DNA from: Antechinus flavipes
Lineage: Eukaryota
DNA: 64,000 bases
NCBI RefSeq assembly: GCF_016432865.1
Contig: NC_067399.1
Coordinates: forward strand, 627,254,001-627,318,000
Reading direction: 5' to 3'
Shown here: positions 14,549-59,657 of the stretch, piece after piece
Position numbering within the stretch: the first letter of the stretch is position 1
Layout of the letters: every line of letters begins with the position of its first letter
Made by a program: the position numbers and the translations under genes
Notes under the pieces: model-generated
The model's input: only the letters and a program-made list of their open reading frames with translations
Told to the model about the DNA's origin: nothing
Databases searched by the model: none

Positions 14549-14549
<1 letters not shown>

Positions 14550-14625
<76 letters not shown>
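14550..14625. repeat. (CT)n microsatellite
   Basis: Perfect CT run preceded by (CTCTGT) units. Confidence 0.98.
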
Positions 14626-14629
<4 letters not shown>

Positions 14630-14792
14630 CACATTTGTTCAGCTGTTTGCCAGGTTCAGCACAGAGGATACAAAGAAAAATAAAAACATGGATGTGCCCT
14701 GTCTTCAATGAGCTCACATTCTAATGGTAGATAAAATATGTAATTAAATAAATATATGCTAGGTTTTCATATATACATTGTGACTTAGTCTT

Positions 14793-15695
14793 TTTTTTTA
14801 GATGATGTGATGATATTCTTTTTTTTTTTAATAATTTTTTATTGATAGAACGCATGCCAGGGTAATTTTTTACAGCATTATCCCTTGCATTCATTTCTGT
14901 TCCGATTTTTCCCCTCCCTCCCTCCACCCCTTCCCCCAGATGGCAAGAGTCCTTTACATGTTGAGTGGGTTGCAGTATATCCTAGATACAATATATGTGT
15001 GCAGAACCGAACAGTTTTCTTGTTGCACAGGGAGAATTGAATTCAGAAGGTATAAATAACCCGGGAGGAAAAACATAAATGCAAGCAGTTTATATTTATT
15101 TCCAGTGTTCTTTCTCTGGGTGTAGCTGCTTCTGTCCATCTTTGATCAATTAAGGCTCTCTTTATCAAAGAGGTCCACTTCCATCAGAATACATCATCAA
15201 ACAGTATCATTGTTGAGGTATATAATGATCTCCTGGTTCTGCTCATTTCACTCAGCATCAGTTCATGTAAGTCTCGCCAGTCCTCTCTGTATTCATCCTG
15301 CTGGTCGTTCCTTACAGAACAATAATATTCCATAATATTCATATACCACAATTTACTCAACCATTCTCCAATTGATGGACATCCTTTCATTTTTCAGCTT
15401 CTAGCCACTACAAACAGGGCTGCCACAAACATTTTGGCACATACAGGTCCCTTTCCTTTCTTTAGTATCTCTTTGGGGTATAAGCCCAGTAGAAACACTG
15501 CTGGATCAAAGGGTATGCACAGTTTGATAACTTTTTGAGCATAGTTCCAAACTGCTCTCCAGAATGGCTGGATGTGTTCACAGTTCCACCAACAATGTAT
15601 CAGTGTCCCTGTTTTCCCACATCCCCTCCAACATTCCCCATTATCTTTCCCTGTCATTCTAGCCAATCTGACAGGTGTGTAGTGGTATCTCAGAG
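14793..15695 (-). mobile_element. Young 5'-truncated L1 (ORF2 C-terminus, 3' UTR, poly-A) with a 15-bp TSD
   Basis: Encodes HYTPVRLARMTGKDNGECWRGCGKTGTLIHCWW...; TSD TTGTGACTTAGTCTT at 14778-14792 and 15696-15710. Confidence 0.95.
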
Positions 15696-15714
15696 TTGTG
15701 ACTTAGTCTTCATC

Positions 15715-15955
15715 ACTAAATGACTGTTAAAGTCCTTAGTTTAAAAAGGCCAAGGTCCTGCATTGCATCCAGAGCCATCTTCAATCATCCCGGAGCTATA
15801 TCTGGCAACTGTAGCCAGATGGGTATGGAAGGGAAAGTGAGGCAGTTGATCTTGCACCATCCTCCTTCACTTAAATCCAATTCACTTGAATGCCATGGCG
15901 TCACCTCTGATGTCATGGTCCTCTTTGAGAATGAAGGACAAAAAACAACAATCAA
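15715..15955 (+). mobile_element. 3' part of an RTE-derived non-autonomous element (WALLSI/RTESINE-like); other partial copies at ~12000-12150, 21330-21482 and 37020-37100 (-)
   Basis: Shared tail gtcctctttgagaatgaaggacaaa(caa)n; homologous to the long copy at 30142-30674. Confidence 0.7.
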
Positions 15956-18477
15956 GTAAAATCAACAAACAGATGTCTGATCTTATCTATATGTACAAAT
16001 ATTAAAATAGAATGGAATTCACAGAAAAACAAATCCTGGAATTGAATTGTAAGGAAATAAAATAAACTACCCGAGTTTTTCTTTTTTCTTGGCTGATGGA
16101 AAATAAAATACATACTTGCAATGCTGTACCGTACAGAAAAGGATTATCCATTTTACTTGGGTAAGAAAGCAAGTTACTTCTTTGCTCTTCTGCTGAGAAA
16201 TGGAGTTTTCCTGGATCTAAAAAGGAGAGAGATGGCAAACATTGATACAAAGCCAAGGTTTTTCTGGATTTACACTTCCCTGAGGCCATGAAGGATCCAC
16301 GTACACATTTTTTGGGCCAAGTCTTTCAAGGTTTACTTGCAAGTCAATTGCAACACTACTGAATTACCATTTATTATTTGTGCTAGCATAGATTGTTCTG
16401 AAGATGTCTGAAAAGGAATTTATGTTTCTCCATCTGGAGATTAGACATTTGATAGTGGGAATTTCACTACCATTATTCTAGGCTACTCTCTGAATTCTCT
16501 TTCTTTGGACTCATTCCCAAACAGTTTCCATTTTTGATCAAGAATTTTTTTTTTTTGATAGCACAGGTCTGAAGTCTAGAAGAAAAGATTCAGATCCTAT
16601 CTCTAAGAATATCTACTATCTATGGGACCTTCAGCAAGTCTCCTAATCTCATCTGAAAATGTCTTTATGATCTCTGTGGTTCCTTTTAGTTCTAGATCTA
16701 TGATCTTATGATAAATCCTCCTTTCCAAAACAGGATTTGCTAATTATTATTGATTGATTGGCTAGCAGCAAGAATGACAAAATTCATTTCAAGGGTGTCC
16801 AATTTTTTGTGATTCCACTTAGGATTTTCTTGACAGAGATATTAGAGTGGTTTGCCATTTCCTTCTCCAGGGTTAAATGACTTGCCAAAGTCACATAACA
16901 AAGAAAGCTGAATTTGTACTCAGAGAAATGAATCAATTTGATTCCAAACCCTGTGCAATATAGCTGCTCTATACCTACTAGTATATAGTTTTTTTCACCT
17001 AATCAGTATAGCATTTGTGTTATTCTTCATAATGACAAGTATTAATTACCCTTGCTTACTTTCCCCCTTCTATTCCTATGTGCTTCAAGTCTCTAACATG
17101 AAGCTACTTAGAGTCCTGAAACTGGCTACTTCTCTTATATTCAAAGAGAAACAGATTCTTTCTCCCAATACTCTTATTTTTCCAGATCATATTTCTTCTG
17201 GGATAAAATGGTAGCACTTATATTTTTAAACTATCTTTGAAGTGGCACTAAATAAGGATTTAAAAGAATCTGGGGGTGTAAAGGACATGCCAAAGTTCTC
17301 TTAGAATCAAAGATCTAGCTCTGGAAGGGATTTTAGGTAATTTCTAGTCCAATTCCCTGATTTTAGGGAAGATTGAGGTCCAGAGGAATAAAGCAACGTG
17401 TCCAAAGTCACACAGCTAGTAAGCATTAGAGATGGGATTTGAATCCATTAGAACCAGCCCACTTTTCCATTATATCAAGTCTACTCAGACCTGGTGAGTT
17501 TTAAGCATGATTCCAGCTGAATCTTACTTCTGAAATCTGAAATCTGAAAATTTACTTCTAAATCTCCTTTTCCCAACTCTAGGATTTAGAGATTATGTTC
17601 TTGTCACTCAGAAATTCAAGAGATCATCTAGTCACATATTTAAATATCTTGAAGGCCATGCAGTTCAGTCTCCTTATTTTACAGATGAAGTAACTGAGGT
17701 CTAGAGTGCTGAAGGAACTTATCCAATGTCACACAAATAGTAAGTTTCCAGGCCAGGATTCAAGCCCAGGTCCTCTGCCTCCAAATCTGGCACTCTTTCA
17801 ATATATTCATACTTTTAAATCAGCAGATGTTGGGGTAGGGTGAGGGAAGCTTCCAGACTCGGAGAAACTTTTTAATTATATTTTTTGAGCCCTGAAGTCT
17901 TCACTGAATCATGAAGTCAACTGCTTCCATCCTTGATCTAGATCTGGTACCATCTCCTTCAGGAAGCACTTTTGACCAGTTCAGTTCTTCTTGATCTCCT
18001 TTTCATAAAAACTGTTCTAGTCCATATAAATGGTATGGTGTCATTTGCCATTTGATTATATTCTCGTGTTTCAGGCATATTTATCTTACCTTTCCAGTTT
18101 TTTGAAAGCAAGGGTTGCTTTATATTTTTGTCTCCTTTCCAGTGTCTGGTATGGAACTTAGCCCATATTGAATGCTCATTACTTATGATTTGATTGGTTG
18201 ACATTGTGATGACCTCAGACTTTGTGCTATAAACCCCCCTTCCAATAAGTTGCTTTCCCTTGCATGGACAGTTCTGTAAATGGAATAATTGGGATGGAAG
18301 CTAATTGTTGAATATGTCCAATTAAAATGTAACTATCAGTGTAGGTGGGAGAAATCCTCTTTTTTGGTAAGATAGATTCTTGAAATAATGGTATGTTAGA
18401 TAAAAAAATACTATGCTTAGATAGATGACTGATCGTAAACAAGACATTGCTTTTAGATGATTAAAGGATGGGATAGA

Positions 18478-18640
18478 GCAGAGCTTCTTAAATTGTGGGA
18501 CAAACTTCATATGAGGCTATGTAACTGAATGGGGAGGTTTACAAAATGAAGATTTATTATCATAATTGATTATATACTTATTTTATATACCTAATTACCC
18601 AGGGTTGCATAAAAATTTCTCGGGTTGCAAATGGAAAAAA
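18478..18640. mobile_element. hAT-type MITE, decayed
   Basis: cagagcttcttaaattgtggg terminus, ...taaaaatttctcggg...gaaaaaa pattern typical of Charlie-like MITEs. Confidence 0.55.
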
Positions 18641-20075
18641 AAATTGGTGCTCAGATGATGGAGATTTAGGATTCATTTTTTATTCTATAGTTTTACTCCT
18701 TCACCCTGACTAATCCAGTTCTCTGTCATATCTTAGCCATGTAGTGATGCTTAGTCTTTGGGCAGTATAGAGACAGCTTTATGACCCAGAGTACCTAGTA
18801 AATCCAGAATATTTAGACTTGAATATTAGGGTACAGCTAGGCATTCTCAAGTAAGATACCTGAATAAAGGTATGGCAGAAATAACCTCAGTCCTTGACTA
18901 TGAAAGGTACAAGGAGGGGTATGTCTGGTACTAGAGTTGAATTAGTTTTTAACCTATTAAATGTATTTTTTTTCATCTTATTTGGGACTCAATAACTTAG
19001 AAAGGAATGTCACTGGAGGCCTAACAGACATTGGAGGAAAAAGTCCCCTCCCCCCGGTTTAATAATAATAATAATAATAAGGGGCAGCTAAGTGAATAGT
19101 GGCTAGAATGCTGGACCTGGAGTCAGTAACTCATTTTCCTGAGATCAAATCTGACCTCAGACACTTCTGATTTCAAAATGGGCTGGGGAAGGAAATGGCA
19201 AATAACTCTAGCATCCTTGCCAAGAAAACCCCAAATGAGGCCAGGAAAAGTTAGACGTGAACAAAATGATGGAACAGCAACAACAAATTAATAACAATAA
19301 TAACAATTCAAGTTATTTATGTGAAGTGCTTGCCCTTTATAGCTAATTACATTTAACTCTATAGCAATTATTTGTCATTAAATATTTATCAAATGCATTT
19401 GTTAGTTATTTTTATTGTACCATTAAACTTTGTTCTTTTATGGCCACTGCATTATATGAAGAATTTCACAGAGCTTTGTATTTGATGAGTGCTAGCTAAA
19501 GACTTGTTGAATTGAATTGAATTTATTCAGTCACTTCTTTAAATGGTACAGATTAGGACTCATCCATATCTTAGTGAACTGCTTACTAACTGTATGACTT
19601 CATGTCATTTGCTTCACTTTCTCCATCTGTAAAATGGGGATAATAATAGCTCTCCAACCAAGATTGTTGCATAGTTAATATAGTGACATTTGTAAACTTT
19701 AAATTACTATAATTTAGTATAATTTACTATAAATTTGTAAATTTTAAATTACTATATAAATGCAAACTATTTTCTTATTGTTAGTAGGGTGATATTATTT
19801 TAAATTTAGCTATACTGACTCTTGGATGACAGAATTACAGTTTAGTCTTCTGTTGTTTCCAACCTGGTAGGACCTACAGAGCCTATCCTTTTCTTGTACA
19901 GCCTTTGAGAACACTAGGTTACCTTCCTGCCATCATGAGACATGAGAGAAGAGGATTTTGTGCACATAACCATGGCAATCACTCATCTCTATAGCACCAA
20001 TTTATAACCTGGTCCTCTGTTCACAATATGGAAGGAACATGAATGGTAACCATCTTGTTTTTCTTTTCCATGCAG

Positions 20076-20294
20076 GTCACTGTCCAGTACATCCAGGACA
20101 ATGGGGCTGTCATTCCAGTGCGTATTCACACCATTGTGATTTCTGTACAACACAATGAGGACATCACGCTAGAGGACATGCGCCAAGCTTTAAAGGACCA
20201 AGTGATCCGAGCTGTGGTGCCTTCAAAATATCTGGATGAAAAGACAATTTACCACCTGCAGCCCAGTGGGCGTTTTGTTATTGGTGGGCCACAG
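20076..20294 (+). CDS. MAT1A: MAT1A exon 6 (219 nt)
   Basis: catgcag|...CAG|gtgcct; encodes [73 protein letters not shown]. Confidence 0.98.
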
Positions 20295-20389
20295 GTGCCT
20301 TATTTTTCTTTACATCTCAGTATTCAGTTTGTTTTATAGATTCCTGTCTGTATAATTATGCATTAATCTTACTATTTAGTTATTTATAT

Positions 20390-21175
20390 ACTTCTCTATT
20401 TATCCACTTATCTATCTACTCAACCATCCAACAATCTATCTATTCATCTATCTATCTTTCTATCATTTATCAGTCTACCTATCTACTTAGCTATCTTACT
20501 ATTAATCTATCTACCCATACATCCAAATATCTGTTTGTCTATTTTATCCATCCATCCATCCATCTATCCCTCTATTATCTATCAACATGTTTATCTACTT
20601 ATCTATCTTCTTATTTATCTATCCATACACTCAATTATCTATTTTTCTGTTTATCTATCTATCTCTCTATCTTCCATCAATCTGTCTACCTACCTGTTTA
20701 CCTATTTTACTGTATATCTATCTATACATCCAATTACCCATATATCTATTTTTTTTGTCATTTATAAATCTGTCTACCTATCTACTTATCTATCATCTTA
20801 TTTGTCTATCCATACATCCAATTATCTATCTGTCTGTCTGTCTATTTTATCTACCTATTCATCCATCCATTTATCTATCATATATCAATGTCTACCTATC
20901 TACTTATCCATCTTTTTATTTATCTATCTCTCCATCCAATTATCTATGTATCTATCATCTATCTTTTTATCATCTATCAATCTGTCACCTACCTATTTAT
21001 CTGTTTTACTATATATCTATCCATACATCCAATTACCTATCTTTCTATCATCTATCAATATGTCTACCTACTTATCTATTGTCTTATTTTTCTATCCATA
21101 CATCCAATTATCTATTTATCTATCTACTCACCTATCTATCCATCTAATCATCTATCTCTCTATCATTAAAAAAAG
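20390..21175. repeat. ~780-bp degenerate (TCTA/CCAT)n array with higher-order periodicity
   Basis: Tetramer units plus the recurring anchor CATCCAATTA; accounts for the spurious ORFs at 20535-21179. Confidence 0.92.
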
Positions 21176-24100
21176 ATGATATTATTATTATCTATTTTGT
21201 AATGAACGAGAATCTATTAATTTTCTTATATTCACTTTTGGAAAACAGAGAAAAGTAATCCCTCTCTTTTTGAAACAAATACGCATATTTAAGAAAAACA
21301 CTTTTTAATAGGCTATATTGTCTTGATCTGTACCTTGCTACTAATCTCAGATGGCTCTCGAGGGGAAAGGGAGGCAGGTGATCTTGCACAACCCTTCTTC
21401 ACTCAGATCCAATTCACTTGTATTTCATGATATCACCTTTCTGATGTCATAGTTCTCTTTGAGAATGAAGGACAAACAACAATAAAAAAATATATCTCAA
21501 TATGTCAACCACCTCTCTGTCAGGGGGTAGGTAATGTATTTCATCATGGTTGGTATCTTTTTGCTCCATGTCCACATGTATGTCCAGGGAGACATAGGAG
21601 TTGATTTGAAGTGGCACAGTGGAGTTTGGAATTTATCTCTACTTTCTGAAATCTCAGGAACAAATTTAATACTTCTTCCACATAAGAAGCTTTCAAGTCC
21701 TTTAAGGCAACTGTCATATACCCTTAATCTTTCCTTTTCCAAGTAAAATATCCCTATATGAACTTAATAGTAATAATGCTAATGTATATCTAGAACTTTA
21801 AGGTTTGCAAAGTGCTTTCCAAATATTATTTCGTTTAATCCTTATAGCAACATTGGAAGGTAGGAACTATTATGTCCCCATTTTATGAGACTTAGATGCA
21901 AAGAGAGTAGCTCATTTAGCTAGATTGGAATTTGGGTCTTCCTGACTCCAGGGTCTGTGTTTTATTAATTGTGTTCCTTTAGCTACTCTTTGAACTATTA
22001 TTATATTCCAATAACCTAGAGTGAATGAGGGATAACAAGTGAATAGCCCAGTACTATCTAGATGGTATTAAGAGATTCAGAGTTAGGCACTTTCAGAATA
22101 GCAAGTAGATTTAAGGAGGATTTATAGGCTGACATGGAAAGGAGTTACCCAGGATGAGAAGAAAATACTCACTATATTTATGACCATCATACATATCCAC
22201 TTAGAGGTGACCTTTAGTTTTTCAGAGACTATGACATTCTGTGATTCTTAATTGAGTAGTTCTATCTAATCCAATCAAAAACATATTTGTCAAGTGCCTA
22301 TTATGTGCTAGGAGATCTGCTAAGCATTAAAGGATATAAGAAAAAAAAAAAAGACAGCTGCAGCCTTCAAGGACCTTATAATCTAAAGGAAGACAACATA
22401 CAAAAAAGGGCAGGAAGAGAAGGCAGAGGTGAACAAAATAGGCAACATCTTATTCCTTTGAGCTGAAATGAGGGAGAGTATCAGATGCAAAGTAGAAGGA
22501 GTCCAGTTTGTCTTTTATAAAGGAAAGCATTGGGAGGATTTATCAGAGAAAAGAAGAGGATAAGGGGAGGATGGTCAATCAAGTCTTGAATTAGCAGCAA
22601 GGCTATGGATTTAGAAGTGATGAACTTGGGGGCATCTTGTTCTGTGGAGCTGAAACCAGGCAAAGCAGTGAAGACCAAATCAAGTTCTAGTGGGACAGTA
22701 TTGGTCTGGGCCTTTGTTTTAGGGTGGAATACTACCCAATTTTTCAAATACAAATTAGCTCTCTTTTTTTCCGTCTATTCCATTTAAGGGCCTATCCATT
22801 GTCCAATTTCCCTGTTTGTCCTAGATATATTCATTGCTGGATGAAATCCATGGCCTGCCCATCCAGCTGCTTATCATGAGAGGCTTATTGTGAGGGAGCA
22901 GACTGCCCTTTTCCTGTTCTCCTGAGATGATTCTCTTATTTTCTGCCCCACACAGGGTTATGATATATCTCTGACGTTTCCCTTTTCTGCAGAGGAAGTC
23001 AGGAAGACTTGATTTAAATTTCTACCTTAGATACTTACTAGCTGTGTGATCTAAAGCAAGTCACTTAACTTATGTTTACTCTGGTTTCTTTAGCTATAAA
23101 ATAGGGATAATAACAGCATTTGCCTCACAGATTATTATGAGGGTCAAGTGAGATTATATCTGTAAAGAGTTTCACATAGTACCTGACACATTATAGGTGC
23201 TACATGATGACTTTTCCTCTTCCTTTCTTCCTCTACTCCTTCCCAGCACCTAGATTATGCACCTTCTTTGTTAATGTCAGTTTGTCCTCAAAATCTGGGG
23301 CAGTGGGAAGGCTTTTTCTTATTCACCCTAGAATTTTCCAAAGTGAAGATTTCTTAGCTACAGGAATGTGAGATCATACATTTTGATTAGGAAGGAAGCC
23401 CAGAGGCCATTTAGTTTAACTCTTCATGGTGCAAGTCAGGAAACTGATTGTCACAAGGTAGTTAATGTCAGAGATGAGATTTGAATCCAGATCTTCAGAG
23501 TCCAAAGCCATTCTTTCTGCACTACATTTCTTCACAATAAAAAACAACAATAATAACAATGATGATACCCACAATAATAATTAATGGCTAATATATATTT
23601 ATATATATAATGTGTGTATATATATATATCACTTTAAGATTTGCAAATATGTGGAGTAATATGCAAATATATTCAAAGATGCACATTTTGAACATATGCT
23701 TTACATATACTATCTCATTTAGTCTTTACAACAACACTCTAGTTGGGTGCTATTGGTATTTTACATATGGAGAAACTGAGGCCATACAGAAGTTAAATGA
23801 TGAGAATGGGATCACCCAGTTAATAAGTATTTGAGGAGAGAATTGAAACTTGGTCTTTTTGACTCCAAATCAGGCACTCTGTCCCACTGCCCTGTCTAGC
23901 TGTCTCATCATCACTATAATTCTTATTCTTGCACCATCTTATCTAGGTGTAGGGGGATAAGATCCCCCAGGTGTAGAATCCTATGTCTCATTTCTCATTA
24001 TTCCTATGAAGGAGTTAACTGGAAAGTAGAATATTATTTGATTCAGCTTTAAGCACAAGTAACTGCTCATTCTCCATGACATTTGCAAAAGTCTTAAAGT

Positions 24101-24738
24101 TCCAAAGAAAAGAGTGAATATATAAGGGTAAATAGCAATTAATGACTCTGGTGTCCGGGAGCAGGTGGCCTTGCCCCAGTGACACTTTGACCCATAAGAC
24201 ATCTATTATATCCTGTTCATCATACTTGCCTGGCGGGTGTTGGTCCTGCTCAGGAGGCCTGATTAGAAATCCAGTGACATAAGTAGGGACTTTGGCGAAT
24301 AATTCTAAACACCACTGACCCAATATCACCATCTAGTGGACAATTTCCATTCTAACAGTTTGTAAGGACTGGTTTTCTCTCAGAACTATTTCTTTAGCCA
24401 TCATCTGGTTGCTCTTCCTCCCCCACCCCGTTCACTTTACAGATGAGGAAACTGAGGTTCAAAGGGGAGACAGGACTTAACTAAGGTCAACAGAGGCAGT
24501 TGCTCTCCTGAGTTCTGATCTATCAGTGGCCACAGCATAGGAAAATGGACTGATGCCATTATCTTCTTGTGAGTTCCTTAAGGGAAGGATTGTCTGACCT
24601 CTTTTTGCATCCCTGGAGTTCAGCACGTACCTGGAACATGATAGATACTCAATAGATATTGATTGATTCTGGATGCTGTTGCTGCTTATTCCTCTGTCGG
24701 AAACTGCTCATATGACTCTTATTCTTGCCTCCTTGCAG

Positions 24739-24921
24739 GGGGATGCAGGAGTCACCGGCAGGAAGATCATTGTGGACACTTATGGAGGCTGGGGTGCCCA
24801 TGGGGGTGGAGCTTTCTCCGGGAAGGACTATACCAAGGTGGACCGCTCTGCAGCCTATGCAGCCCGTTGGGTGGCAAAGTCCCTAGTGAAAGCCAAACTT
24901 TGTCGGAGAGTTCTTGTGCAA
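24739..24921 (+). CDS. MAT1A: MAT1A exon 7 (183 nt)
   Basis: cttgcag|...CAA|gtatgt; encodes [61 protein letters not shown], including the SAM synthetase GGGAFSGKD signature. Confidence 0.99.
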
Positions 24922-25639
24922 GTATGTTGATGCTTTTCTCCTTCCTCTCTACCCCTTTCTCCCAATATCTTTTCTATTTCAGGATCCACTTTCTGATTAA
25001 AATCTATGATTTCTGAGATGCTTAAAGTTAAGTTTACTATCTATTAGTCAGTCCTTCATTTGCAGAATTCCATTTTACCCTATGCTATCCTTTCCCCTTA
25101 TATGTTGCTGAAGGAAAAAGACTAAAAGAAAAAGACCTTATTTGTGGTAAAGTGGTAATCTTAAGATGGTAGAATAGAGACTTTAGATTTCTTGCTTTTA
25201 TCAAGCCCTGAATTATGATAAGGGATGGGTAGAGGTAAGATTAGGGTGGGACAATGGGTGATTTGTCCCAGGGTATCAAAATTTAGAGGTTCTGATGGAA
25301 TTTATACTTCATCCAAAAAACAACTGAGATTAGCATCTATGTATTATTATTATTAGTTAAAATAGGAAGCTAAATAGTGGCTCACTTCCTGACACTGATC
25401 TCCCTTGAAACAGCCTATTTCTGCCAATGGGCAGTGGCTTAGAGTCTATCTCCTTATGGTTAGAAGTATATCCCTGAGATATCGATTTTACTTTAACCTC
25501 AATTGAATTTGTTTTTAAAAATTAATTTAAGGGCATCTTTCATGTTGCTTACCTTAGCTGTCAGAACTGCTAGTTATGGCTTTGGGGATGGAAAAGACTC
25601 ACAGCTAATTTGTCTCTTTTGCCCCATCCTTTTATGAAG

Positions 25640-25773
25640 GTTTCTTATGCTATTGGTGTGGCTGAACCTCTCTCAATTTCCCTGTTCACCTACGGGACCT
25701 CCCAAAAGACAGAGAAAGAGCTATTAGATGTGGTGAATAAGAATTTTGATCTTCGTCCTGGAGTCATTGTCAG
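25640..25773 (+). CDS. MAT1A: MAT1A exon 8 (134 nt)
   Basis: tttatgaag|...AG|gtaatg; encodes VSYAIGVAEPLSISLFTYGTSQKTEKELLDVVNKNFDLRPGVIV(R). Not in the supplied ORF track; read directly from the sequence. Confidence 0.97.
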
Positions 25774-26572
25774 GTAATGCTCTGATGGTTGCAAAGTTTG
25801 TATGAGTGGGCACCCACAGACACAGACATGGTTCTAAAGAAGCTATAACCATTTTCCCTTTTCCAGTCTACTTTAGATTCCCTCTCTGCTTCTCATTCAC
25901 TAAAGAGAAAATAAGACAAATGATTTTTTCTTTCTGGAATTATGATTTTTGGAGGAAGAAGAAAAGTAGAAAAGCTCACCCATAAACATGAGCTGAGCTT
26001 TGAAGGAATCTAAGGATTCAACTGGATAGGAATGAGCAAGGAGTGCATTCTGGGCAAAGGGAAATATCTAGGGCCAGACATATCTGTTTCCTTGCCCAAG
26101 AAACTTCAAGAAGGTGAATAGGATTAATGTGCAGGAAACCTGGCAAAGAAAGCCCGATCCAATTTGTGAAATTTCCTAGAGGTGATAAAGAACCATTAAA
26201 CATTCTTGAGCATGGGGTGACATGGTCATAAAAGATGGTAGAGCCTGGCATAGGGAATAATTTCAATGAATTCTTCATTGTAGTAACATAGCTAAATTCT
26301 CTAACAAAGAATTTTCATGACATCCTAAAACTCAAACTTTATATAATAACAGTAAAGCTGTATTTTATAGTGGTTTAGAATTTATTTTGTCCATATTAAC
26401 TTATTTGATGCTTGCCACAACCCAGTGAGGAGGGTGCTATTATTCTTCCCAAATGATATATAGAAAGAGCATGTTCCCTAGTTTTGGTTCTCTGGTGTTT
26501 ATAATGCATGTGATTCATAGAATGCAATTCCAGAATAATAGAACATTCTTTTTCCTTTTGCTGAACTCTTAG

Positions 26573-26675
26573 GGACCTTGATTTGAAGAAGCCAATTTAT
26601 CAGAAGACAGCATGCTATGGCCATTTTGGAAGAAGTGAATTTCCCTGGGAAATTCCTAAGAAGCTCAAATTTTAA
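26573..26675 (+). CDS. MAT1A: MAT1A exon 9, coding part to the stop codon
   Basis: ctcttag|G GAC CTT...TTT TAA; encodes (R)[33 protein letters not shown]. Confidence 0.97.
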
Positions 26676-46929: not shown

Positions 46930-48710
46930 CTTTCAAAAAGACACTTAATAGCATTTTATTTTTTTCAATTACATGTAAAGATAGTTTTCAACATTATTTT
47001 TATTAATTTTGAATTGCAAAATTTTCCCTTTCTTTTCTTCCCTCCACCCTCCCCAAGATATTAAGCAATCAAATATAGACTATAAATCTATAATCATGTT
47101 AAACATATTTCCATATCAATCATTTTGTAAAAAAAGAATGAGAACAAAAAGGAAAACCACAAAAAAAAAGAAAGAAAAAACAAATTTTATCTGCATTCAG
47201 ACTCCATAGTTCTTTCTTTGGATATGGATGTTATTTTCCATCCTAAGTCTTTTGAAATCATCTTGGATCACTGTATTGCTGAGAAGAGCTAAATCTATCA
47301 TAGTTGAGCATTACATAATATTGTTGTTACTTTGTACACTGTTCCTCAGGTTCTGTTCACTATATACTGCATCAGTTCATCATCTTTTTTGGTTTTTCTG
47401 AAATCTGACTGCTCATAATTTTTTTTATAGTACAATAATATTCCATTACATTCATATACCACAACTTGTTCAGCATTCCCCAATTGATAGGTATCCCTTC
47501 AATTTCTAATTCTTTGCTATCACAAAAATAGCACATTTTACTCAGTTCTTTATATATTTTAGAAATGAGGCTTTGCTTGTATTGGTTTTCTTGTGCAAAA
47601 ACTTTTAAATTTAATGTAATCAAAATTATCTATTTTGTATTTCATAATGTTCTCTATCTTTTGTTTGATTATAAATTTCCCTCTTCTCCAGAGATCTGAC
47701 AGATAAAATATTCCTTGCTTTCCTAATTCACTTTTAGTATCAACCTTTATCTCTAAATCACGAACCTATTTACACCTTATTTTGGTATAAGGTGTGAAAT
47801 GCTGATCAATGCCTAGTTTCTCCCATACTGTTTTCCAGTTTTCCGAGCAGTTTGTCAAAAAGTGAGTTCTTATCCCAGAAGCTATTCTCTTTGAGTTTAT
47901 CAAATAGTAAATTTGCCACTGTTTTATGCACCTAAATACCTAAATAGCCAGCACCAAATTGTTTTGATGATTGCTGCTTTGTAATATAACTTTACATTCT
48001 GTATGAGTTTTGTTATTATTTTTTCTAGCTTTAAGAAATATTATTATTATTTGGTATTTTGATTTGTATGGCACTGAATATGTAGATTAATTTAGGTAAA
48101 TTTCTAATTTTTATTATATTAGTTTAGTTTACCCATGAACGATCAATATTTTCCCAGTTGTTTAGATCTGACTTTAATTTGTGCAAAAAGTGTTTTGTAA
48201 CTATGTTCATATAGTTCCTGGGTTTGTCTTGGCAGGTAAACTCCCAAATATTTTCTATTGTACACATTTTTTAAATGAAATTTCTCTATTTATCTCATGC
48301 TGCAGAACTTTGTTGTCAATATATAGAAATGCTGATGATTTATATGCGTTTATTTTATATCCTGCAACTTTGCTAGTTGTTAACTGTTTCAAACAGTTTT
48401 TTAGTTATTCTGAAGGATTTTCTAACTATCATATTATCTACAAAAAGTGATAGTTTTGTTTCTTCATTGCTTATTCTAGTTCTTTCAATTTATTTTCCTT
48501 CTCATCATTAAAGCTAGTTCTTTCTAGTACAATTGGTGAAGTGGCCTCTTGTTACTACACAAAATGCTCTGACTGCACACCAGAGATAGGGAACTAAATG
48601 GGCAAAAACTGAATAATTTTGGTGAATAATAATGGTGATAATGGGCATTCTTGTTTCACCCCTGTTCTTACTGGGAATGCTTCCAGCTTATCCTTATTAC
48701 ATACAATAAA
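46930..48710 (-). mobile_element. Old fragmented L1 (3' UTR plus ORF2 pieces), interrupted at 48533-48618
   Basis: Minus strand gives LISKIYKEL, GIPINWGMLNKLWYMNVMEYY; L1-like sequence resumes at 48620 (gaataataatggtgataatgggcattc). Confidence 0.8.
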
Positions 48711-48959
48711 ACAAGAGTGTCTCAAGAATTGATATTATGCTGATTCTTACAAGGAATTCTGCTGGATTTGGGTTAGATTTCACATCTTGCTTCTGTTCTT
48801 TACTTTCTGTGATCATGAGCCAATCAAATAACTTCTCTAGGAATTTTCTGCTTTCTTTGCTGTAAAATGAGAGGATTGAACTAGAATATTTCTAGTCCTT
48901 TCAAGCTACTGTTTTTTTTGTGATTCTGCAATGTCACTCTGCCAAGTGACTTTACTACT

Positions 48960-49079
48960 TCAAAGAGCCACATTGAGGTTGAAAGGCCATAGATGAAATT
49001 TTTTGTCCATTAGTTCTCTATCTGCTGGTGTGCAGTCAGAGCATTTTGTATAGTAACAACAGGCCACTTCACCAAGATC
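48960..49079 (-). CDS. Possible second coding exon of the SMIM3-like gene (39 aa, Cys-rich)
   Basis: Acceptor tactttactgtgtccttctag|; open in phase 0: DLGEVACCYYTKCSDCTPADRELMDKKFHLWPFNLNVAL*; phase-compatible with the donor TTG|gtagga at 49474. Confidence 0.3.
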   Translation of the reverse strand, partial: DLGEVACCYYTKCSDCTPADRELMDKKFHLWPFNLNVAL

Positions 49080-49458
49080 CTAGAAGGACACAGTAAAGTA
49101 TGGCCCCAGTTGGACACATACGCAAAAGAAAGGAAAGAGCTAATATTCTGATCTATAGTTAGATCTGGGTTTGACTCTTGTCTGCCACTTACTAGCTATG
49201 CGGCTTTGGAGCAGATCATTTCCCTCTTCTGGGCTTCAGTTTTTTTACATGTACTATGGAGAGTTTGGTTGCTTCTTTTAAATTCTGTGATTCTTTGAAG
49301 GGGAAGCAGTTGTCTAACACAGAAGAGCCATTGAAAGTTTGAGACATGAAGGTAAAGGTTATTTGAATTTCACAAATGGCTCAAGACATTTTTGTCTTAG
49401 TAATGACATCTGGGAAAGAATAAGTTTGAAGCAGCAGAGGTCTGGAGAGGGCCTGGAT

Positions 49459-49611
49459 CTATATGATTCCTACCAATGAGATCTCTGGCATCTGGTGAAT
49501 TCTCCAGATGAGGAGGGCCACAGGAGGGAGGATCATCAATGAGGTCATTATCAGGACAGCCCCAATGATCACCAAAGTGATAGCCCAAGGGGCTAGGATT
49601 GTCCCTTCCAT
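49459..49611 (-). CDS. SMIM3/NID67-like small integral membrane protein (50 aa), candidate unannotated paralogue
   Basis: MEGTILAPWAITLVIIGAVLIMTSLMILPPVALLIWRIHQMPEISLVGII*; strong acceptor 16 nt upstream, Kozak AGAATGG, GC3 31/50, ungapped similarity to recalled SMIM3. Confidence 0.7.
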   Translation of the reverse strand: MEGTILAPWAITLVIIGAVLIMTSLMILPPVALLIWRIHQMPEISLVGII

Positions 49612-52600
49612 TCTGGCTTTTGGAAATCTGCAAGTAGAAAGCAAAGTAATATTTCATGTAGAAAGTCACATTGTTTCTGACTAAGTTGTCATAAACATCA
49701 AAAAATATTTTTACTAGATTTTTACTTTTATGTCCTCACTTTGGAATGCCTCTTTATATTATTCCTGGTGATTTATTTCTCTATGTCTCTGTTTCTGTCT
49801 CTGACTCTCTCTCACTCTTTGATGGTATATCTCTTACATGCTTTTATCAGTGACTCAGATGAAACTCATATACCATCTTTAGACAATTTCTAATAGTGTG
49901 AAGATGTGAGAGAGAGCTATTACATTGGATGATAGAATTTGTGTCTGAGAAGATCTAAGAAGATTAGGATGATGGGCTTAATTCAATAAGGCAACATTCA
50001 ATTAGAACAAATGTAAAGCCTTCTTTATTGAATTAAAAAAATCAGTTGCACAAATATGTGAATGTAGGAACTATTTTATTCTTTATGTTGATATCATCAA
50101 ATACCTAATAAAGTGACTGGAAAATAATAGGTAGATACTTAGGTAGCACAGTGGACAGAATTCCAGGCCTGAAGTCAAGAAGACTCATTTTCCTAAATTC
50201 AAATCTGGCCTCAGACTTATTAGCTGTGTGACCCTGGTCAAGCCACTTAACCCTATTTGCCTCAGTTTTCTCATCTATAAAATGAGTTGGTGAAGGAAAC
50301 AACAAACCTCTCCAGTATCCTTTCCAAGAAAACCTTAAATGGGATCATGAAGATTGGATATGACTGAAATGATTGACAATAACAAAAGCTTAATAAAACC
50401 TTATTGATTGAGAGATATGGAGGCATATAGTTTGGTGAAAGATCTTAGAATATAAATGGACTACAAAGCTAGCAGGGTAAGAGAAGCAAAAAGGCACTAA
50501 CATGAGTGGGAATAGAGTAGTGAGTTCCTTGTCACTGGGGCTACTATAGAAATAGTGATGGAGATGAACGCAACAGCTTTGAAACTTCAGTAGGCAGTAA
50601 CCTTTTCTGGCTTGTTTCTTCTTCTGAAAAATGAACAGGAGTAACTAGGTAATCTCTAAGGTCCTTTCTATCTCTAAGTCTAGCAGTTGAAACCATTCTG
50701 TCACCTTGGAGATGAAGAATATATCAGGGCACATATTCCCTCAAGGGAATAATCACCAGAAATGGGTTATAGAGAAGGATGCCATGAAGACTGCTAAGAA
50801 TCATTGGTTTGTGCCATTTAAGGAAGCTACCGATAAAGTAAGTCACTAGCTTTCTGAGCTTCAGTGTCCTGATTTGTTTTTAAGAAAAGAAAGCAAAAAA
50901 AAAAAAAAAAGAAAGAAAAGGAAAGCAAAAAAAAAAAAGGAAAATAGTTTCTATATCTTAGGATTATTGTGAAGAGCAAATGAGATCATTTAAATAAAAT
51001 GCTTTGGAAACATAAAAATGCTATGTCAATGATTATCCTTAATTTTATTTTTCTTTTTCCTAAACTCCCCCAATACCAAGTTTTTTGCAGCTACTACATA
51101 TTTTTGACTCCAAGTCAGTTTCTAGCAGCATCAAAGGGTACTGGACATAAAGATGAGGATCTAGATGCTTGACTGGGTTCTATTAGTTATTATTTCCTAG
51201 AGGGGAAGATATATGGGATAAGGTGAATTAATTTAGTTGTTTAGAGTGTGATGATTATAAGTCCAAAGTCACAAGGGCCAATTGATTTGAGGTGAAGCAG
51301 CATGGTTCAGTATTTAGAGTGCCAGGTCTGGAATCAGGGTATCTGCATTCAAATTCTGATTCTGTTACTTTCCATCTGAATGACTTTGGGCAAACTCAAG
51401 TTCACTTTTTTTAAGCTTCAGGTTCCCCCTCTGCAAAATGAGGAGTTGGATTAAATTAAATCTTTGTTTCCATCCATTTCTAAAGCTATGATCCCATGTG
51501 CTATATATATACCCATCATAATCCTTTTCCCTGACAAAGCAGATGAGGCAATGGGAAACTATCATCAAAAGAATCATTTTGAGTGATCAGAAGCATCAAA
51601 AATGAGGGGCTTTCTGAGTAGTGTTTTGGGTTTTCCTTTTAAATGAAAATTTCTGCTGGTTTCTTCTTCTACTTAATAACAAGAAGGTGGAAGTGTCTAT
51701 TTCATACTAATTCTGGGAAATGAGACTGTTGGCAGGATCCATATGGGTAAAACCTTATCATAACTGACACTGTTTGTTGTGTGCACTGTGTGACATGGAT
51801 CCCATGGTATTTGGTGTTGGTACAAACACAATGGCAAGTGTTTGTTAAGAAAACAGCAAACCCTAGCTTTCTGGTTGGCCAGATTGTTAATGAAATGGCA
51901 AGAAACTTAGTCAGGTGAGGATGGAGAATGTAGGCAATTCCTCTTCTGGAACAATCTGGGAGCTGAAAGGGAAAACCCCATAATGGTTGCCTAGACAAAC
52001 TTTGCACAGAAGGTTGTTTGTTCGCATTATAACCAGATTCTTTATTGAAAGTCTGAACATGGTAGTGAGAGGAAATATCAAAGAAAATCCCATTTTCCCA
52101 GGGAAGGAAAAAAAGAGGCAGCACAGCTAGTAATAAATAATGAGGAAGATGATAGCTAGGACATGTAGTATGATAAGGTATACAAACTGCTTTACATCTT
52201 ATCTCATTTGATCTTCATAATAATTTTGTGAGGTAGGTGCTATGCTCGTTTTACAGAGGAAGAAATTGAAGCTGAGGGAAACAATAAGTGACTTGACCAG
52301 AGTCATACAGCTATTAAGTGTTGGAGGCAGAATTTGAATTTAGGGATTCCTCAGTCCAATTAGAGCAATCTGTCCATTATAACTTCTCAAATTCAAGAAA
52401 TCAGCTTCATCATCTACAACCTGTTTTCCTCTCAGTTACTTTCTTTCTGCCGATGGTATGATCATTCACCCTCAGTGGAAATTGTTGGACCTGGAATAGA
52501 GAGACATGGGCTTCCTTTTTCCAACATGTATTAACTAGTCGAATAACCATATACAGCATGCTCACTATGAATCAGTGGTGTGACAACTTTGTTACATGGA

Positions 52601-56919: not shown

Positions 56920-59657
56920 AAATAATCATAGGTTAGTCCTCTGACTTGTAACCCTTAAATTCAATTTTATGCACTGCATGTGTATATTTTTACTCTAACT
57001 AGAAGATAGGCTTTTAGAAGTTAGGAATTATAGCGTCTATATAATTCATATGCAAAAGTTAATCAATACATACGTCAGAAACTAACACCTCCCAACATAT
57101 TGAGCCAGCATGCTCTGCCTTGGGTAAATCACAGGATTATAACCCCTTGGAGAGTGTCAGGCCAAATTTTCTTAGTTTATAACTGAGGCCCACAGACTTG
57201 TCCATGGATGGCAACTGGGATGATGAGGAAAGTCAAAATGAGGTCATATAACGCTTAGCTGAAAGACTGTTGAAGGAAAGAAGACTTAGGAGGGTCTTCA
57301 AACTCTTCAACTTGGTATTTAATGACCTTCACAGGCTGCCTCCTGCTTTCTTTTCAGATTTATTATACATGATACCACTTGGTTCATTCTATATTCAGTA
57401 AAACTGGCCTGCCTGCTATATCAGCATCTGTCTCTGCTTTTGTACAGTGGCTCTCCTGATGCCTAAAACTTATTCTTGTCTTACCAACATCTCTTGGAAT
57501 CTCTTCAAGCCCCTTATCACACATCACCTTTTAGGAGAAACCTTTTCTGATTCCCTTAATTTCCAATTTCTGTTTTTCAAACAATCACTTTCACTTTTTT
57601 GGGGCAGTGAATGGAATGCCAGGCCTAGAGATAGGAAGACTTATTTTCATGAGTTCAAATCTTACCACTGACTAGCTCTATGACTCTGGGCAAATCATGT
57701 AATCCCGTTTGCCTCAGTTTCTTCATCTGTAAAATGAGCTGGAGAAGGAAATAGCAAACAAACACACTCCTGTAGCTTTGCCAAGAAAACTCCAAATGTG
57801 ATCAGATCCAAATGGAACCAGACAAGATTGAAAGAGTAAACAACAAGTTCACTTGTTAGTATTTCCCAGAGTAAGTTTTTTGAAGGCAGGGACTATTTAT
57901 TCTCCTTCATTTTGTCTTTTTGTCCAGTAGTGCCTTAAGCAGACACTTAATAAATTCTTATTGGATTGGATTAGGATGCTTTCATTAAGGACTAAATGTT
58001 ATTCAACCTTAAAGCCTGTTATTGAAACACAAATATCTTTAATCATCTATCAGTCTCACCTTTACTTTCCAAATATCTACTTAAGAGAGCTCCAGACAAA
58101 CAAATGCCCCTCTAGGATATCATGCTTTCAAATTTCAAATTCAAAGTTTCAGACTAAGCAGCTCCCTTCATCCTCAACTTTGAAGAATGAGCTCATAAAA
58201 CAGGGAGAGCAAAGACACTTTACCACTTATAGAACATTACCTTTTCCACTTGTGTCTGAGACTCCTTATGAAACAAGATCTTCAAGTGGTCCCTAGAATC
58301 ATGGAAACACAGAGAATTTTAGCTAAAAGAGATGTTGGGATCCTCTAGGCTGACCCTCTCATCTTGACAGGGACTGTTACCTTACACCTATATTGTACTA
58401 TATGATTTTCAAAGCCCTTTCCTAAATTTATTAATTTTGTTAGATACTTAAAACAGCCTATACAAAGAGATAGGAATTATTAGAACTAGAATCATTCTGT
58501 TAGATTATAATCTCTTTGGGAGCAGGGATTTTTTTTTTGTTTGTATCTTTAGTGCTTGGCACATAGTAGGCACTTTATAAATGCTAGATGACTGACTGAT
58601 AATCCCCATTAGACAAATGAGGAAACTAAGGTTCAGAAAACTTGTTTTGGTCAAATTGTTATGTTGAATGAAACCCTGATGATTATTAGGTTGGTGCTTA
58701 TCTATCTAACTCTTTCATTGAGAAAATTAGAGCCTAAATTAATTAAGTGATTTCTATAGTTACACAGCTTATAAACAGGAGAGCCACTATTTGAACCCAG
58801 GTCCTTTGCTGTTAAATTCAATGCGCTTTCCATTCATTAGGTAACCATATTACATCACTTCCCTTATTTGTATCTTATATTGACAGTGTAACACTCATCA
58901 CAGATGCATCCTTCAGAGCAGAGCATACTTTTAGAACCTATGGTAACAGGGTAATTCCATTGATGACTAGGGTACATATTTTAATGAGTTTGGATGTACA
59001 ATACAGTATATAGCCTGATTTCAGGGAGCTCTTGTTAACACTGAGGTCTCTAGGTGAGACAGATGGCTATCTGAGAATCATGGCACTTTTTGCTATGATT
59101 GATTATTCTATCATCACCAAAGCAAATAAAAAAATCAAGAACCTAGACGATAAATAGAGATCAGGAGTCTTCCTAGCCACTGGTATTGAGTGGTAAAGTA
59201 GATATAATATGCTGGTCTCCTGGATGGCTGGGATGGGGAGATGATTGTGGGATAGTTATTTTTGATAGAAAGGATCAGATGGAGGAGGAGGTATGAAGAG
59301 TGTGGATCCCTGGTTGTGCCTGGGTAACAGGTGAATTAGATAGAAAGAAAGAACCTTTGAAAGTAGTCATCAAATTCTAAGTATGGATTCTTGGAGCTAG
59401 TGCTATGTCAGGTATTCAGGGCAAGGATTCTAGCCCAAGTTAGGTGGGCAGCCTGTGGCACTACTGGAAAAAGAACAGGAGCCCTGGGTGCCAGTGTTGA
59501 GTGCCATAGAGTAATACTAGCAGGTGGCTCATGATGAATAACTGAGCAGATTTGGCTTTATATCTGAGCTGGCATTTCTGAGTCTCCAGAGAGAACCAAC
59601 AGTGCTCAAAGAGAAGCCAGTGGATTTAAAGCAGCAGAAAGTATCTAGGACTTGATT

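What the first reader, a model, noticed from the sequence alone, without database searches (positions are those of the whole stretch)
49459..49650. Candidate unannotated SMIM3/NID67-family microprotein gene convergent with MAT1A
Seen: acceptor tactttgctttctacttgcag| at 49627, ATG 16 nt later in strong Kozak context, and a 50-codon ORF with 34 consecutive uncharged residues followed by R-x-H. Local GC is 50% and GC3 62%, well above the AT-rich background. Recalled, not searched: human SMIM3 [38 protein letters not shown] aligns gap-free to ILAPWAITLVIIGAVLIMTSLMILPPVALLIWRIHQMP, 16 of 38 identical including IMTSL, W, P, A and R, with most other differences conservative. That pattern suggests purifying selection, not a decayed retrocopy. 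SMIM3 also has its CDS behind a 5'-UTR intron and lies near ANXA6 on human 5q33, which is paralogous to the ANXA11-MAT1A region of 10q22. Inference: an ancient, possibly whole-genome-duplication paralogue kept in marsupials, with no human counterpart known to me.
Basis: partly seen in the sequence, partly recalled or inferred. Interest (0 to 1): 0.85.

Follow-up and report, generated by a model that had tools for sequence, protein, structure and literature searches.

The report
SMIM3-like membrane microprotein gene beside MAT1A
The 50-codon reading frame is a real, conserved gene for a tiny single-pass membrane protein, a sister of SMIM3 found in frogs, reptiles, birds, platypus and marsupials but in no placental mammal's predicted proteins; databases list it only as "uncharacterized" and no paper describes it.

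Summary
On the minus strand an acceptor (exon starts at 49627) is followed 16 nt later by an ATG in good context, then a 50-codon ORF (49611-49462, stop 49459-61).

The product passes Pfam's Smim3 threshold (30.2 bits against 25). It belongs to a distinct clade, called SMIM3L here, of 50-54 aa proteins with a C-terminal P-[EQ]-I-S-L-x-G-x-[VI] tail. Members occur in Tasmanian devil, koala, platypus, alligator, lizard, snakes, many birds and two frogs. No eutherian or fish member appeared among predicted proteins.

- **Synteny:** a hawfinch has the same neighbourhood (C-type lectin, SMIM3L, then a convergent MAT gene).
- **Separate locus:** true SMIM3 exists in the devil, and fish smim3 lies between dctn4, gpx3 and tnip1.
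- **Selection:** dN/dS is 0.13 against koala.
- **Gene structure:** the acceptor just before the ATG is conserved, and a spliced, polyadenylated bird RNA contig uses it.

"Unannotated" does not hold for relatives. Ensembl and NCBI already carry automatic models, one named "SMIM3-like", but I found no paper on it. A whole-genome-duplication origin is plausible but undated (AU test inconclusive). Function is unknown. The most likely role is a transmembrane accessory subunit, as proposed for SMIM3.

The parts
49462..49611 (-). Coding sequence of the 50-aa SMIM3-like microprotein (stop codon at 49459-49461)
   Evidence: ORF and translation. Pfam PF17307 Smim3, 30.2 bits against cut-off 25. 98% identical to devil A0A7N4PDU9 and 88% to koala. 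dN/dS 0.13. AlphaFold2 gives one helix over residues 8-40, mean pLDDT 83.
49612..49627 (-). 16-nt 5' leader of the terminal exon, between the acceptor and the ATG
   Evidence: Sequence. The same short leader is seen in koala (15 nt), hawfinch and kakapo (15 nt) and Ascaphus (23 nt). Devil SMIM3 has 11 nt.
49628..49650 (-). Polypyrimidine tract and AG of the 3' splice site
   Evidence: Sequence. The site is conserved base for base in koala. The orthologous acceptor is used in the spliced, polyadenylated bird RNA contig L011. Its use in the window's own species is inferred, not shown.
58241..58292 (-). Upstream non-coding exon (orthologue of exon 2 of the koala model) with intact AG and GT splice sites
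   Evidence: tblastn and DNA alignment to koala L003 16078-16132. The exon is about 94% identical and flanked by tag| and |gtaa in both species. Joined to 49627, it puts an in-frame TGA upstream of the ATG. Its use in this species is inferred.
48354..49458 (-). Probable 3' UTR, down to the first AATAAA signals at 48494 and 48354
   Evidence: Poly(A) signal positions. 78% identity to koala in the 300 nt after the stop, against 66% in the intron. RNA-labelled runs hold about 15% of sampled words of 48500-50500 and 27% of 49400-49760. The extent is inferred.
11799..26675 (+). Neighbouring MAT1A-type S-adenosylmethionine synthetase gene (exons seen at 11799-11963, 20043-20336, 24667-24927, about 25640-25770 and 26571-26675), convergent with the microprotein gene
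   Evidence: Motif scan. Pfam S-AdoMet_synt_M and S-AdoMet_synt_C on four exon translations. The same convergent neighbour is present in hawfinch L002.

Best explanation
Window 49459-49627 (minus strand) is the start of the terminal, only coding exon of a real multi-exon gene. It encodes a 50-residue single-pass membrane microprotein, a distinct paralogue of SMIM3/NID67 called SMIM3L here.

Shown:
- Family membership.
- A separate, well-supported SMIM3L clade present from frogs to birds, platypus and marsupials.
- Conserved position next to a convergent MAT1A.
- Conserved ORF length and stop.
- Purifying selection.
- A conserved splice acceptor 15-23 nt before the start codon, used in a bird mRNA.

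Inferred:
- The protein inserts with a very short N-terminus outside or in the lumen. It has a long, proline-kinked helix (about residues 5-40) in the membrane. A 10-13-residue cytosolic tail starts at R37/H39 (positive-inside rule) and ends in the clade-specific P-E-I-S-L-x-G-x-I/V motif.
- The residues invariant across both paralogues (I11, I15, M22, L25, P29) fall on one helical face. This suggests it works by helix-helix packing, as an accessory or regulatory subunit of another membrane protein or as an oligomer. That is the role proposed but never demonstrated for SMIM3, by analogy with phospholamban, FXYD and KCNE proteins.
- The gene was probably lost, or decayed, on the eutherian stem.
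For: - Pfam Smim3 E 3.5e-7, above the gathering score. hhalign of SMIM3L against SMIM3 profiles gives 98.4%, E 5.9e-15.
- An exhaustive HMMER search and a profile search found SMIM3L-type proteins in devil, koala, platypus, alligator, tegu, three snakes, more than 15 birds, Xenopus and Ascaphus. All are 50-54 aa in their conserved core, with the stop at the same position.
- The SMIM3L clade has 100/99 support.
- Synteny: hawfinch has Lectin_C, then SMIM3L, then a 222-aa gene, then a convergent 396-aa MAT. Kakapo and koala have a lectin or collectin upstream. The window has the convergent MAT gene.
- A separate SMIM3 exists in devil. Fish smim3 lies between dctn4, gpx3 and tnip1.
- dN/dS is 0.13 (window against koala, p 8e-5), 0.29 (hawfinch against kakapo, p 0.007) and 0.18 (window against hawfinch).
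- CDS identity to koala is 86%, against 66% for the intron.
- The acceptor is conserved. Bird contig L011 is spliced at exactly that site, spans at least three exons and ends in poly(A).
- An upstream non-coding exon keeps its splice sites in the window.
- RNA-labelled runs of two to three organisms hold words of the stretch.
- AlphaFold2 gives a single helix over residues 8-40.
- The functional analogy for SMIM3 comes from PMC9783723, which cites Vician et al. 2001.
Against:
- The first exon and promoter were not located. Koala exon 1 has no counterpart between the collinear blocks, and N runs lie nearby.
- There is no proteomic or ribosome-profiling evidence in any species.
- The function of even the well-known paralogue SMIM3 is untested, so the mechanism rests on analogy and on the conservation pattern.
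- Absence from eutherians and fishes rests on predicted-protein databases, not on genome searches.
- Profile scores between membrane helices are somewhat inflated by shared composition.
Confidence: 0.87

Rival explanations
1. The duplication that produced SMIM3L is a vertebrate whole-genome-duplication (2R) event. SMIM3 (5q33-type block: DCTN4-SMIM3-GPX3-TNIP1-ANXA6) and SMIM3L (10q22-type block: collectins-MAT1A-ANXA11) would then be ohnologues, with SMIM3L later lost in fishes and eutherians. This competes only with the next entry, on the gene's age, not with the gene's reality.
For: The two genes lie at different, individually conserved loci. With a midpoint root, all fish and shark sequences fall on the SMIM3 side. 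A topology with SMIM3L outside bony-vertebrate SMIM3 is not rejected (AU p 0.37). From general knowledge, not tested here: human 5q31-33 and 10q22 share many ohnologue pairs (NDST1/2, CAMK2A/G, SYNPO/SYNPO2L, MYOZ3/1, SEC24A/C, ANXA6/ANXA11).
Against: No fish, shark, lungfish or coelacanth SMIM3L was found. In the unrooted best tree SMIM3L joins the tetrapod SMIM3 side, with fish and sharks together on the other side (97/99). That arrangement fits a younger duplication at least as well. Only about 60 alignment columns are available.
Confidence: 0.5
2. SMIM3L arose by a smaller DNA-level duplication on the tetrapod stem and then diverged quickly. It is about 350 million years old but not a 2R ohnologue.
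For: It is known only from tetrapods. The best tree places SMIM3L with tetrapod SMIM3, against fish plus sharks (97/99), on a very long stem branch.
Against: The short alignment leaves the attachment point unsupported (82/0), and the alternative is not rejected. Its location in a block classically paralogous to the SMIM3 block would then be a coincidence.
Confidence: 0.37
3. The real product is longer: the 67-aa devil model or the 127-aa koala model, with an N-terminal extension encoded by upstream exons.
For: Ensembl and NCBI models carry such extensions. The window has the devil-type upstream ATG and a GT donor at about 50190-50139.
Against: The extensions share nothing between devil, koala, birds and alligator. 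The devil extension lies in a MIR-like SINE, and it needs an acceptor (gccag|a) that koala lacks. In the window, a 16-nt rather than 15-nt leader and a 3-nt exon-2 deletion put an in-frame TGA upstream of the ATG. The conserved core starts at the same methionine in 12 aligned species.
Confidence: 0.05
4. It is a decaying retrocopy or pseudogene of SMIM3, or a chance hydrophobic ORF in a non-coding RNA or intergenic DNA.
For: It is short, hydrophobic and only 33-40% identical to SMIM3. No transcript junction was shown in this species.
Against: The ORF and stop position are intact from frogs to marsupials. dN/dS is well below 1. The intron before the ATG is retained, as in SMIM3, which a retrocopy would lack. 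Synteny is conserved, and a spliced mRNA exists in a bird.
Confidence: 0.02
5. It is the SMIM3 orthologue of this genome, merely diverged.
For: It hits the same Pfam family.
Against: Devil, Xenopus, Ascaphus, cobra and tegu each have both genes. SMIM3 lies at another locus, on a different devil chromosome region and beside dctn4/gpx3/tnip1 in fish. The clades are separated with 100/99 support.
Confidence: 0.01

Closest known systems
SMIM3 / NID67 (small integral membrane protein 3; Pfam PF17307)
   Same: Both are single-pass microproteins of 50-60 aa. They align without gaps across the membrane helix, with invariant L6, W9, I11, L13, I15, M22, L25, P29 and R37. Both end in G-x-V/I. In both, the whole CDS lies in the last exon, with an acceptor 11-23 nt before the ATG.
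   Different: Identity is only 33-40%. SMIM3L lacks the 12-15-residue N-terminal segment and the PKHILD(I/V)W motif, having (I/V)LAPW instead. It has PP rather than CPA in the helix, W rather than Y before the arginine, and a two-residue-longer tail with P-[EQ]-I-S-L. It sits at a different locus (beside MAT1A, not DCTN4/GPX3/TNIP1). No eutherian member was found, whereas SMIM3 is nearly invariant across mammals.
Automatic database models of the same gene in other species: UniProt A0A7N4PDU9 (devil), NCBI LOC110201596 (koala), LOC115607976 (kakapo), "small integral membrane protein 3-like" (Zonotrichia), A0A6I8NFJ6 (platypus), A0A6I8RYF3 (Xenopus)
   Same: They are orthologues: 98% (devil), 88% (koala), 70% (platypus) and 54-64% (birds, frog) identical over the 50-aa core, with the same tail motif and the same neighbourhood.
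   Different: The models disagree on the N-terminus (50 to 127 aa), and their extensions are not conserved. None has a name beyond "uncharacterized" or "SMIM3-like", and none has a publication.
Small single-pass regulatory subunits (phospholamban/sarcolipin, FXYD proteins, KCNE/minK)
   Same: Size, a single helix and conservation concentrated in the membrane span. This is the analogy proposed in the literature for SMIM3.
   Different: There is no sequence relationship, and no partner is known for SMIM3 or SMIM3L. The resemblance is in likely mode of action only and was not tested here.

Membership tests
Pfam PF17307 Smim3 family (SMIM3/NID67-like microproteins) | Whole-protein score at or above Pfam's curated gathering score | tested here: met
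   30.2 bits against a cut-off of 25, E 3.5e-7, protein residues 5-42 on profile positions 17-54 of 60. Profile-profile probability 98.4%.
Pfam PF17307 Smim3 family (SMIM3/NID67-like microproteins) | 50-60-aa protein with one long hydrophobic helix and the conserved W / M-[TS] / P / R positions | tested here: met
   Invariant L6, W9, I11, L13, I15, M22, L25, P29 and R37 in a 15-sequence alignment. The best 19-residue hydropathy mean is 2.68, and the only charges are E2, R37, H39 and E43. AlphaFold2 helix over residues 8-40.
Pfam PF17307 Smim3 family (SMIM3/NID67-like microproteins) | Gene architecture: complete CDS in the terminal exon, directly behind a 5'-UTR intron | tested here: met
   Window acceptor 16 nt before the ATG. 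Devil SMIM3 11 nt. Koala 15 nt, birds 15 nt, Ascaphus 23 nt. A bird mRNA contig is spliced there.
SMIM3 proper (orthologue of human SMIM3) | Position in the DCTN4-SMIM3-GPX3-TNIP1 neighbourhood, and grouping with SMIM3 sequences in a tree | tested here: not met
   The window gene lies beside a MAT gene. Fish smim3 lies between dctn4, gpx3 and tnip1. Devil has a separate SMIM3. The SMIM3L clade is separated with 100/99 support.
SMIM3L subfamily (uncharacterized LOC110201596 / LOC115607976 type) | 50-aa core ending in P/S-[EQ]-I-[ST]-L-x-G-x-[VI], with the stop at the same position | tested here: met
   Invariant I44, S45, L46 and G48 and a common end in 12 aligned sequences. The same tail is seen in 23 further hits. 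Alligator has T for S.
SMIM3L subfamily (uncharacterized LOC110201596 / LOC115607976 type) | Location between a collectin/C-type lectin gene and a convergent MAT1A | tested here: met
   The convergent MAT gene is in the window and in hawfinch. A lectin or collectin lies upstream in hawfinch, kakapo and koala. By collinearity with koala, the collectin would lie beyond the window's end, so that half was not seen in the window itself.
2R ohnologue pair (SMIM3 / SMIM3L) | Duplication node older than the split between cartilaginous and bony vertebrates | tested here: inconclusive
   The old-duplication topology is not rejected (AU p 0.37). The best tree equally fits a tetrapod-stem origin.
2R ohnologue pair (SMIM3 / SMIM3L) | The two loci lie in chromosome blocks that share many other ohnologue pairs | not testable with these tools
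   Only the immediate neighbours were seen. The 5q31-33 / 10q22 paralogy is recalled from general knowledge.

The most novel reading that the evidence does not exclude
SMIM3L is a vertebrate-wide-duplication sister of SMIM3 that has been kept as a translated 50-residue membrane protein for at least 350 million years in amphibians, sauropsids, monotremes and marsupials. It was lost on the eutherian stem. A conserved tetrapod membrane microprotein has therefore gone unstudied because human and mouse lack it. Comparing species with and without it could reveal the still unknown partner and role of the SMIM3 family.
Probability: 0.45. Interest if true: 0.45.

Novelty: new member of a known kind. 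Interest (0 to 1): 0.35.

Why it matters
SMIM3 is widely used as a marker (leukaemia prognosis, claustrum neurons), yet it has no known molecular function.

This work shows that the family has a second, ancient, selectively maintained member. That member has its own conserved tail motif and a fixed genomic address beside MAT1A. This gives:
- a cleaner definition of which residues matter, namely one invariant helical face shared by both paralogues;
- a natural loss-of-gene experiment, if eutherian absence is confirmed at the DNA level;
- a correction to several database models whose N-terminal extensions are not conserved.

It is a modest addition to gene catalogues rather than a new kind of system.

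Tried and rejected
- **Read laying on 47000-52999.** Those places were sent to no search tool afterwards. The second run search used 49400-49760. In my own scripts they were masked from then on. Two earlier local scripts used the whole window file only as a local BLAST subject.
- **Word-share arithmetic.** RNA-labelled runs hold 0.15 of 48500-50500 and 0.27 of 49400-49760. This fits a transcribed terminal exon in a close relative. It is too coarse to place boundaries, and I do not count it as proof.
- **The look-up of encoding contigs for the devil protein P0001.** Nothing is on record.
- **Logan contigs L004-L010 for bird proteins.** They carry the intron, so they are genomic and say nothing about transcription. 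Only L011 is a transcript.
- **A 38-aa typed query.** It was too short.
- **Dating the duplication.** The tree and AU tests were inconclusive.
- **Koala exon 1 in the window.** No counterpart was found, so the promoter is unresolved.
- **tblastx of the bird 222-aa gene against window 26.7-49.4 kb.** No match.
- **Literature searches for SMIM3-like/SMIM3L/LOC ids and earlier scan notes.** Nothing relevant.
- **Rejected readings.** Retrocopy or pseudogene, chance ORF, the SMIM3 orthologue, and the longer 67-aa or 127-aa products (see rival explanations).
Full report
**1. The observation**

On the minus strand the sequence reads ...tactttgctttctacttgcag|ATTTCCAAAAGCCAGA ATG GAA GGG....
- The AG ends at 49628 and the exon begins at 49627.
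- The ATG is at 49611, with A at -3 and G at +4.
- The frame runs 50 codons to a TAG at 49461-49459.
- Residues 3-36 are uncharged and are followed by R37-x-H39.
- CDS GC is 0.49 and GC3 is 0.62, in a region mostly at 0.25-0.40 GC.

A MAT gene lies on the plus strand. Four exon translations hit Pfam S-AdoMet_synt_M or S-AdoMet_synt_C, and the last coding exon ends near 26675. The two genes are therefore convergent, about 22.8 kb apart.

**2. Family membership**

The 50-aa product scores 30.2 bits (E 3.5e-7) on Pfam PF17307 Smim3, above the curated cut-off of 25. A language-model look-up also puts Smim3 clusters first.

They align to the window protein without gaps across the membrane segment at 31-40% identity. 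L6, W9, I11, L13, I15, M22, L25, P29 and R37 are invariant.

**3. It is not SMIM3 but a separate, old paralogue**

I ran an exhaustive HMMER profile search of 1.84 billion representative proteins and a second profile search. Both recovered a set of proteins that share the window protein's features rather than SMIM3's. These features are a 50-aa core, (I/V)LAPW near the start, PP in the helix, W-R after it, and a tail P-[EQ]-I-S-L-x-G-x-[VI] that ends at the same position.

Named members:
- Tasmanian devil (UniProt A0A7N4PDU9, 98% identical);
- koala (NCBI LOC110201596, 88%);
- platypus (70%);
- alligator, tegu and three elapid snakes;
- more than 15 birds, including kakapo LOC115607976 and a Zonotrichia entry that NCBI calls "small integral membrane protein 3-like";
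- Xenopus tropicalis and Ascaphus.

The unnamed Logan proteins all carry the sauropsid PQISL signature. No eutherian and no fish or shark sequence has these features.

Devil, Xenopus, Ascaphus, cobra and tegu each have both genes. In a maximum-likelihood tree the 13 sampled SMIM3L sequences form one clade with 100/99 support, against 23 SMIM3 sequences from tetrapods, ray-finned fishes and cartilaginous fishes. Profile against profile, the two groups are clearly homologous (hhalign 98.4%, E 5.9e-15).

**4. Synteny**

- In the hawfinch the order is C-type lectin (+), SMIM3L (+), a 222-aa gene (-), then a 396-aa S-AdoMet synthetase (-). That is the same convergent MAT arrangement as in the window.
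- Kakapo and koala have a lectin or collectin gene upstream.
- Koala and the window are collinear over the whole interval at 70-78% identity. The collectin would lie just beyond the window's end.
- By contrast, smim3 of Arapaima and Conger lies between dctn4 and gpx3 or tnip1. To my knowledge this is the human 5q33.1 order.
- The devil's SMIM3 sits at its own locus.

**5. Selection and coding status**

| Comparison | Measure | Result |
|---|---|---|
| Window vs koala | differences | 21 nt (7 nonsynonymous, 14 synonymous) |
| Window vs koala | dN/dS | 0.13; binomial p 8e-5 for fewer nonsynonymous changes than neutral |
| Hawfinch vs kakapo | dN/dS | 0.29 (p 0.007) |
| Window vs hawfinch | dN/dS | 0.18 (p 6e-4) |
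| Window vs koala | CDS identity | 86% |
| Window vs koala | identity, 300 nt of intron | 66% |
| Window vs koala | identity, 300 nt after the stop | 78% |

The start methionine, the length and the stop are the same from frog to marsupial.

**6. Gene structure**

The acceptor directly before the ATG is conserved:

| Species | Acceptor and first exon bases | Distance to ATG |
|---|---|---|
| Koala | ...tatttgcag\|ATTTCC | 15 nt |
| Hawfinch and kakapo | ...tttacag\|CTTCAGAC | 15 nt |
| Ascaphus | ...tgtatag\| | 23 nt |
| Devil SMIM3 itself | ...cttcacag\| | 11 nt |

The shared architecture argues for a DNA-level duplication and against a retrocopy.

A Logan contig from run SRR21676483 (L011) is a processed transcript.
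- Its 5' part matches two upstream exons of the kakapo, hawfinch and L004 loci, 2-8 kb away.
- It joins them to the terminal exon exactly at the conserved acceptor, with a GT donor at the orthologous genomic site.
- It ends in a poly(A) run about 475 nt after the stop.

In the window, the orthologue of koala exon 2 is present at 58241-58292. It has intact AG and GT sites and about 94% identity. When it is joined to 49627, an in-frame TGA precedes the ATG. In this species the product can therefore only be the 50-aa protein.

The longer database models are not conserved.
- The devil's 17-residue extension comes from an ATG and donor inside a MIR-like SINE (window about 50190-50139). It needs an acceptor (gccag|a) that koala lacks.
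- The koala's 77-residue extension depends on a 15-nt leader and is unrelated to any other species' sequence.

**7. RNA evidence in the window's lineage is weak**

RNA-labelled runs of two or three coded organisms from three studies hold 0.15 of the sampled words of 48500-50500 and 0.27 of 49400-49760. This fits a transcribed terminal exon seen through a few per cent divergence, but it cannot place boundaries.

I worked beside those places afterwards.

**8. Likely mode of action (inference)**

- The protein is essentially one helix (AlphaFold2 helix 8-40, mean pLDDT 83; hydropathy).
- It has a 4-7-residue acidic or neutral N-terminus and basic residues just after the helix. By the positive-inside rule the N-terminus is outside or in the lumen, and the 10-13-residue tail is cytosolic.
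- The positions invariant in both paralogues fall into two stripes. I11, I15, M22, L25 and P29 lie within about 80 degrees of one another on a helical wheel. L6, W9 and L13 lie on the opposite side near the N-terminal end.
- This is the pattern expected of a helix that packs against another membrane helix. The clade-specific tail is a candidate cytosolic contact.
- For SMIM3 the literature offers only the analogy to minK, the Na,K-ATPase gamma subunit and phospholamban, and states that no in-depth functional study exists (PMC9783723).
- I therefore commit, with low confidence (about 0.3), to an accessory or regulatory subunit role through transmembrane packing. The partner is unknown.

**9. 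Age**

The gene predates the split between amphibians and amniotes. Whether it dates to the vertebrate genome duplications is open.
- With a midpoint root, all fish and shark sequences are on the SMIM3 side.
- In the unrooted best tree, however, SMIM3L sits with tetrapod SMIM3, against fishes plus sharks (97/99).
- The alternative that places SMIM3L with cartilaginous fishes is not rejected (AU p 0.37).
- The two loci lie in blocks that I recall as classical paralogues (human 5q31-33 and 10q22). I could not test that here.

**10. Novelty and verdict**

It is not unknown to databases, because automatic models with the Smim3 domain exist in many species. No paper in the searched library mentions it.

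It is best described as a new, unnamed member (subfamily) of a known microprotein family. It is of modest interest, mainly because it appears to be missing from placental mammals.

Noticed in passing
window 50139-50340 (minus strand): A MIR-like SINE copy. Its ATG and a GT donor (50190-50139) supply the non-conserved 17-residue N-terminus of the Tasmanian devil Ensembl/UniProt model, which is probably an annotation artefact.
   Followed up: partly
window 59958-60286, 61358-61549, 62093-62693; L003 9840-12754: Three N runs (left untouched). Koala exon 1 of the SMIM3L model (L003 10001-10163) lies in a 2.9-kb koala segment with no counterpart between the collinear blocks that meet at window 61886-61901. 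The first exon and promoter in the window's species are therefore unresolved.
   Followed up: partly
L002 19524-22654 and L001 28202-32241 (minus strand in locus orientation): Birds have a 222-223-aa gene without any Pfam hit between SMIM3L and MAT1A. It is conserved between hawfinch and kakapo and includes a cysteine-rich stretch. tblastx finds no counterpart in window 26.7-49.4 kb.
   Followed up: partly
L001 23745-23908, L002 16963-17126, L011 about 350-531: Most birds have an extra in-frame ATG four codons upstream (MEEI-MVET..., 54 aa). In the species of transcript L011 that codon is ATT, and only the 50-aa form is possible. The 50-aa core is therefore the conserved product.
   Followed up: partly
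protein P0145: A 789-aa predicted protein of unknown origin. It is built of at least 12 tandem copies resembling the C-terminal half of a Smim3-type protein (...LLSPPVLVLVYRLHTD...). It is probably a tandem-repeat or assembly oddity.
   Followed up: no
window 26571-26675 (+): The last coding exon of the MAT gene ends ...[24 protein letters not shown]. Only the Pfam domains were tested.
   Followed up: partly
L014 and L015 (devil SMIM3 loci): The identical 60-aa SMIM3 protein is encoded in two dasyurid-sized assemblies (GCA_902635505.1 and GCA_048593225.1). The window's SMIM3L differs from the devil protein at one residue (I16V), so the window is probably from a close relative or another individual or assembly.
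   Followed up: no
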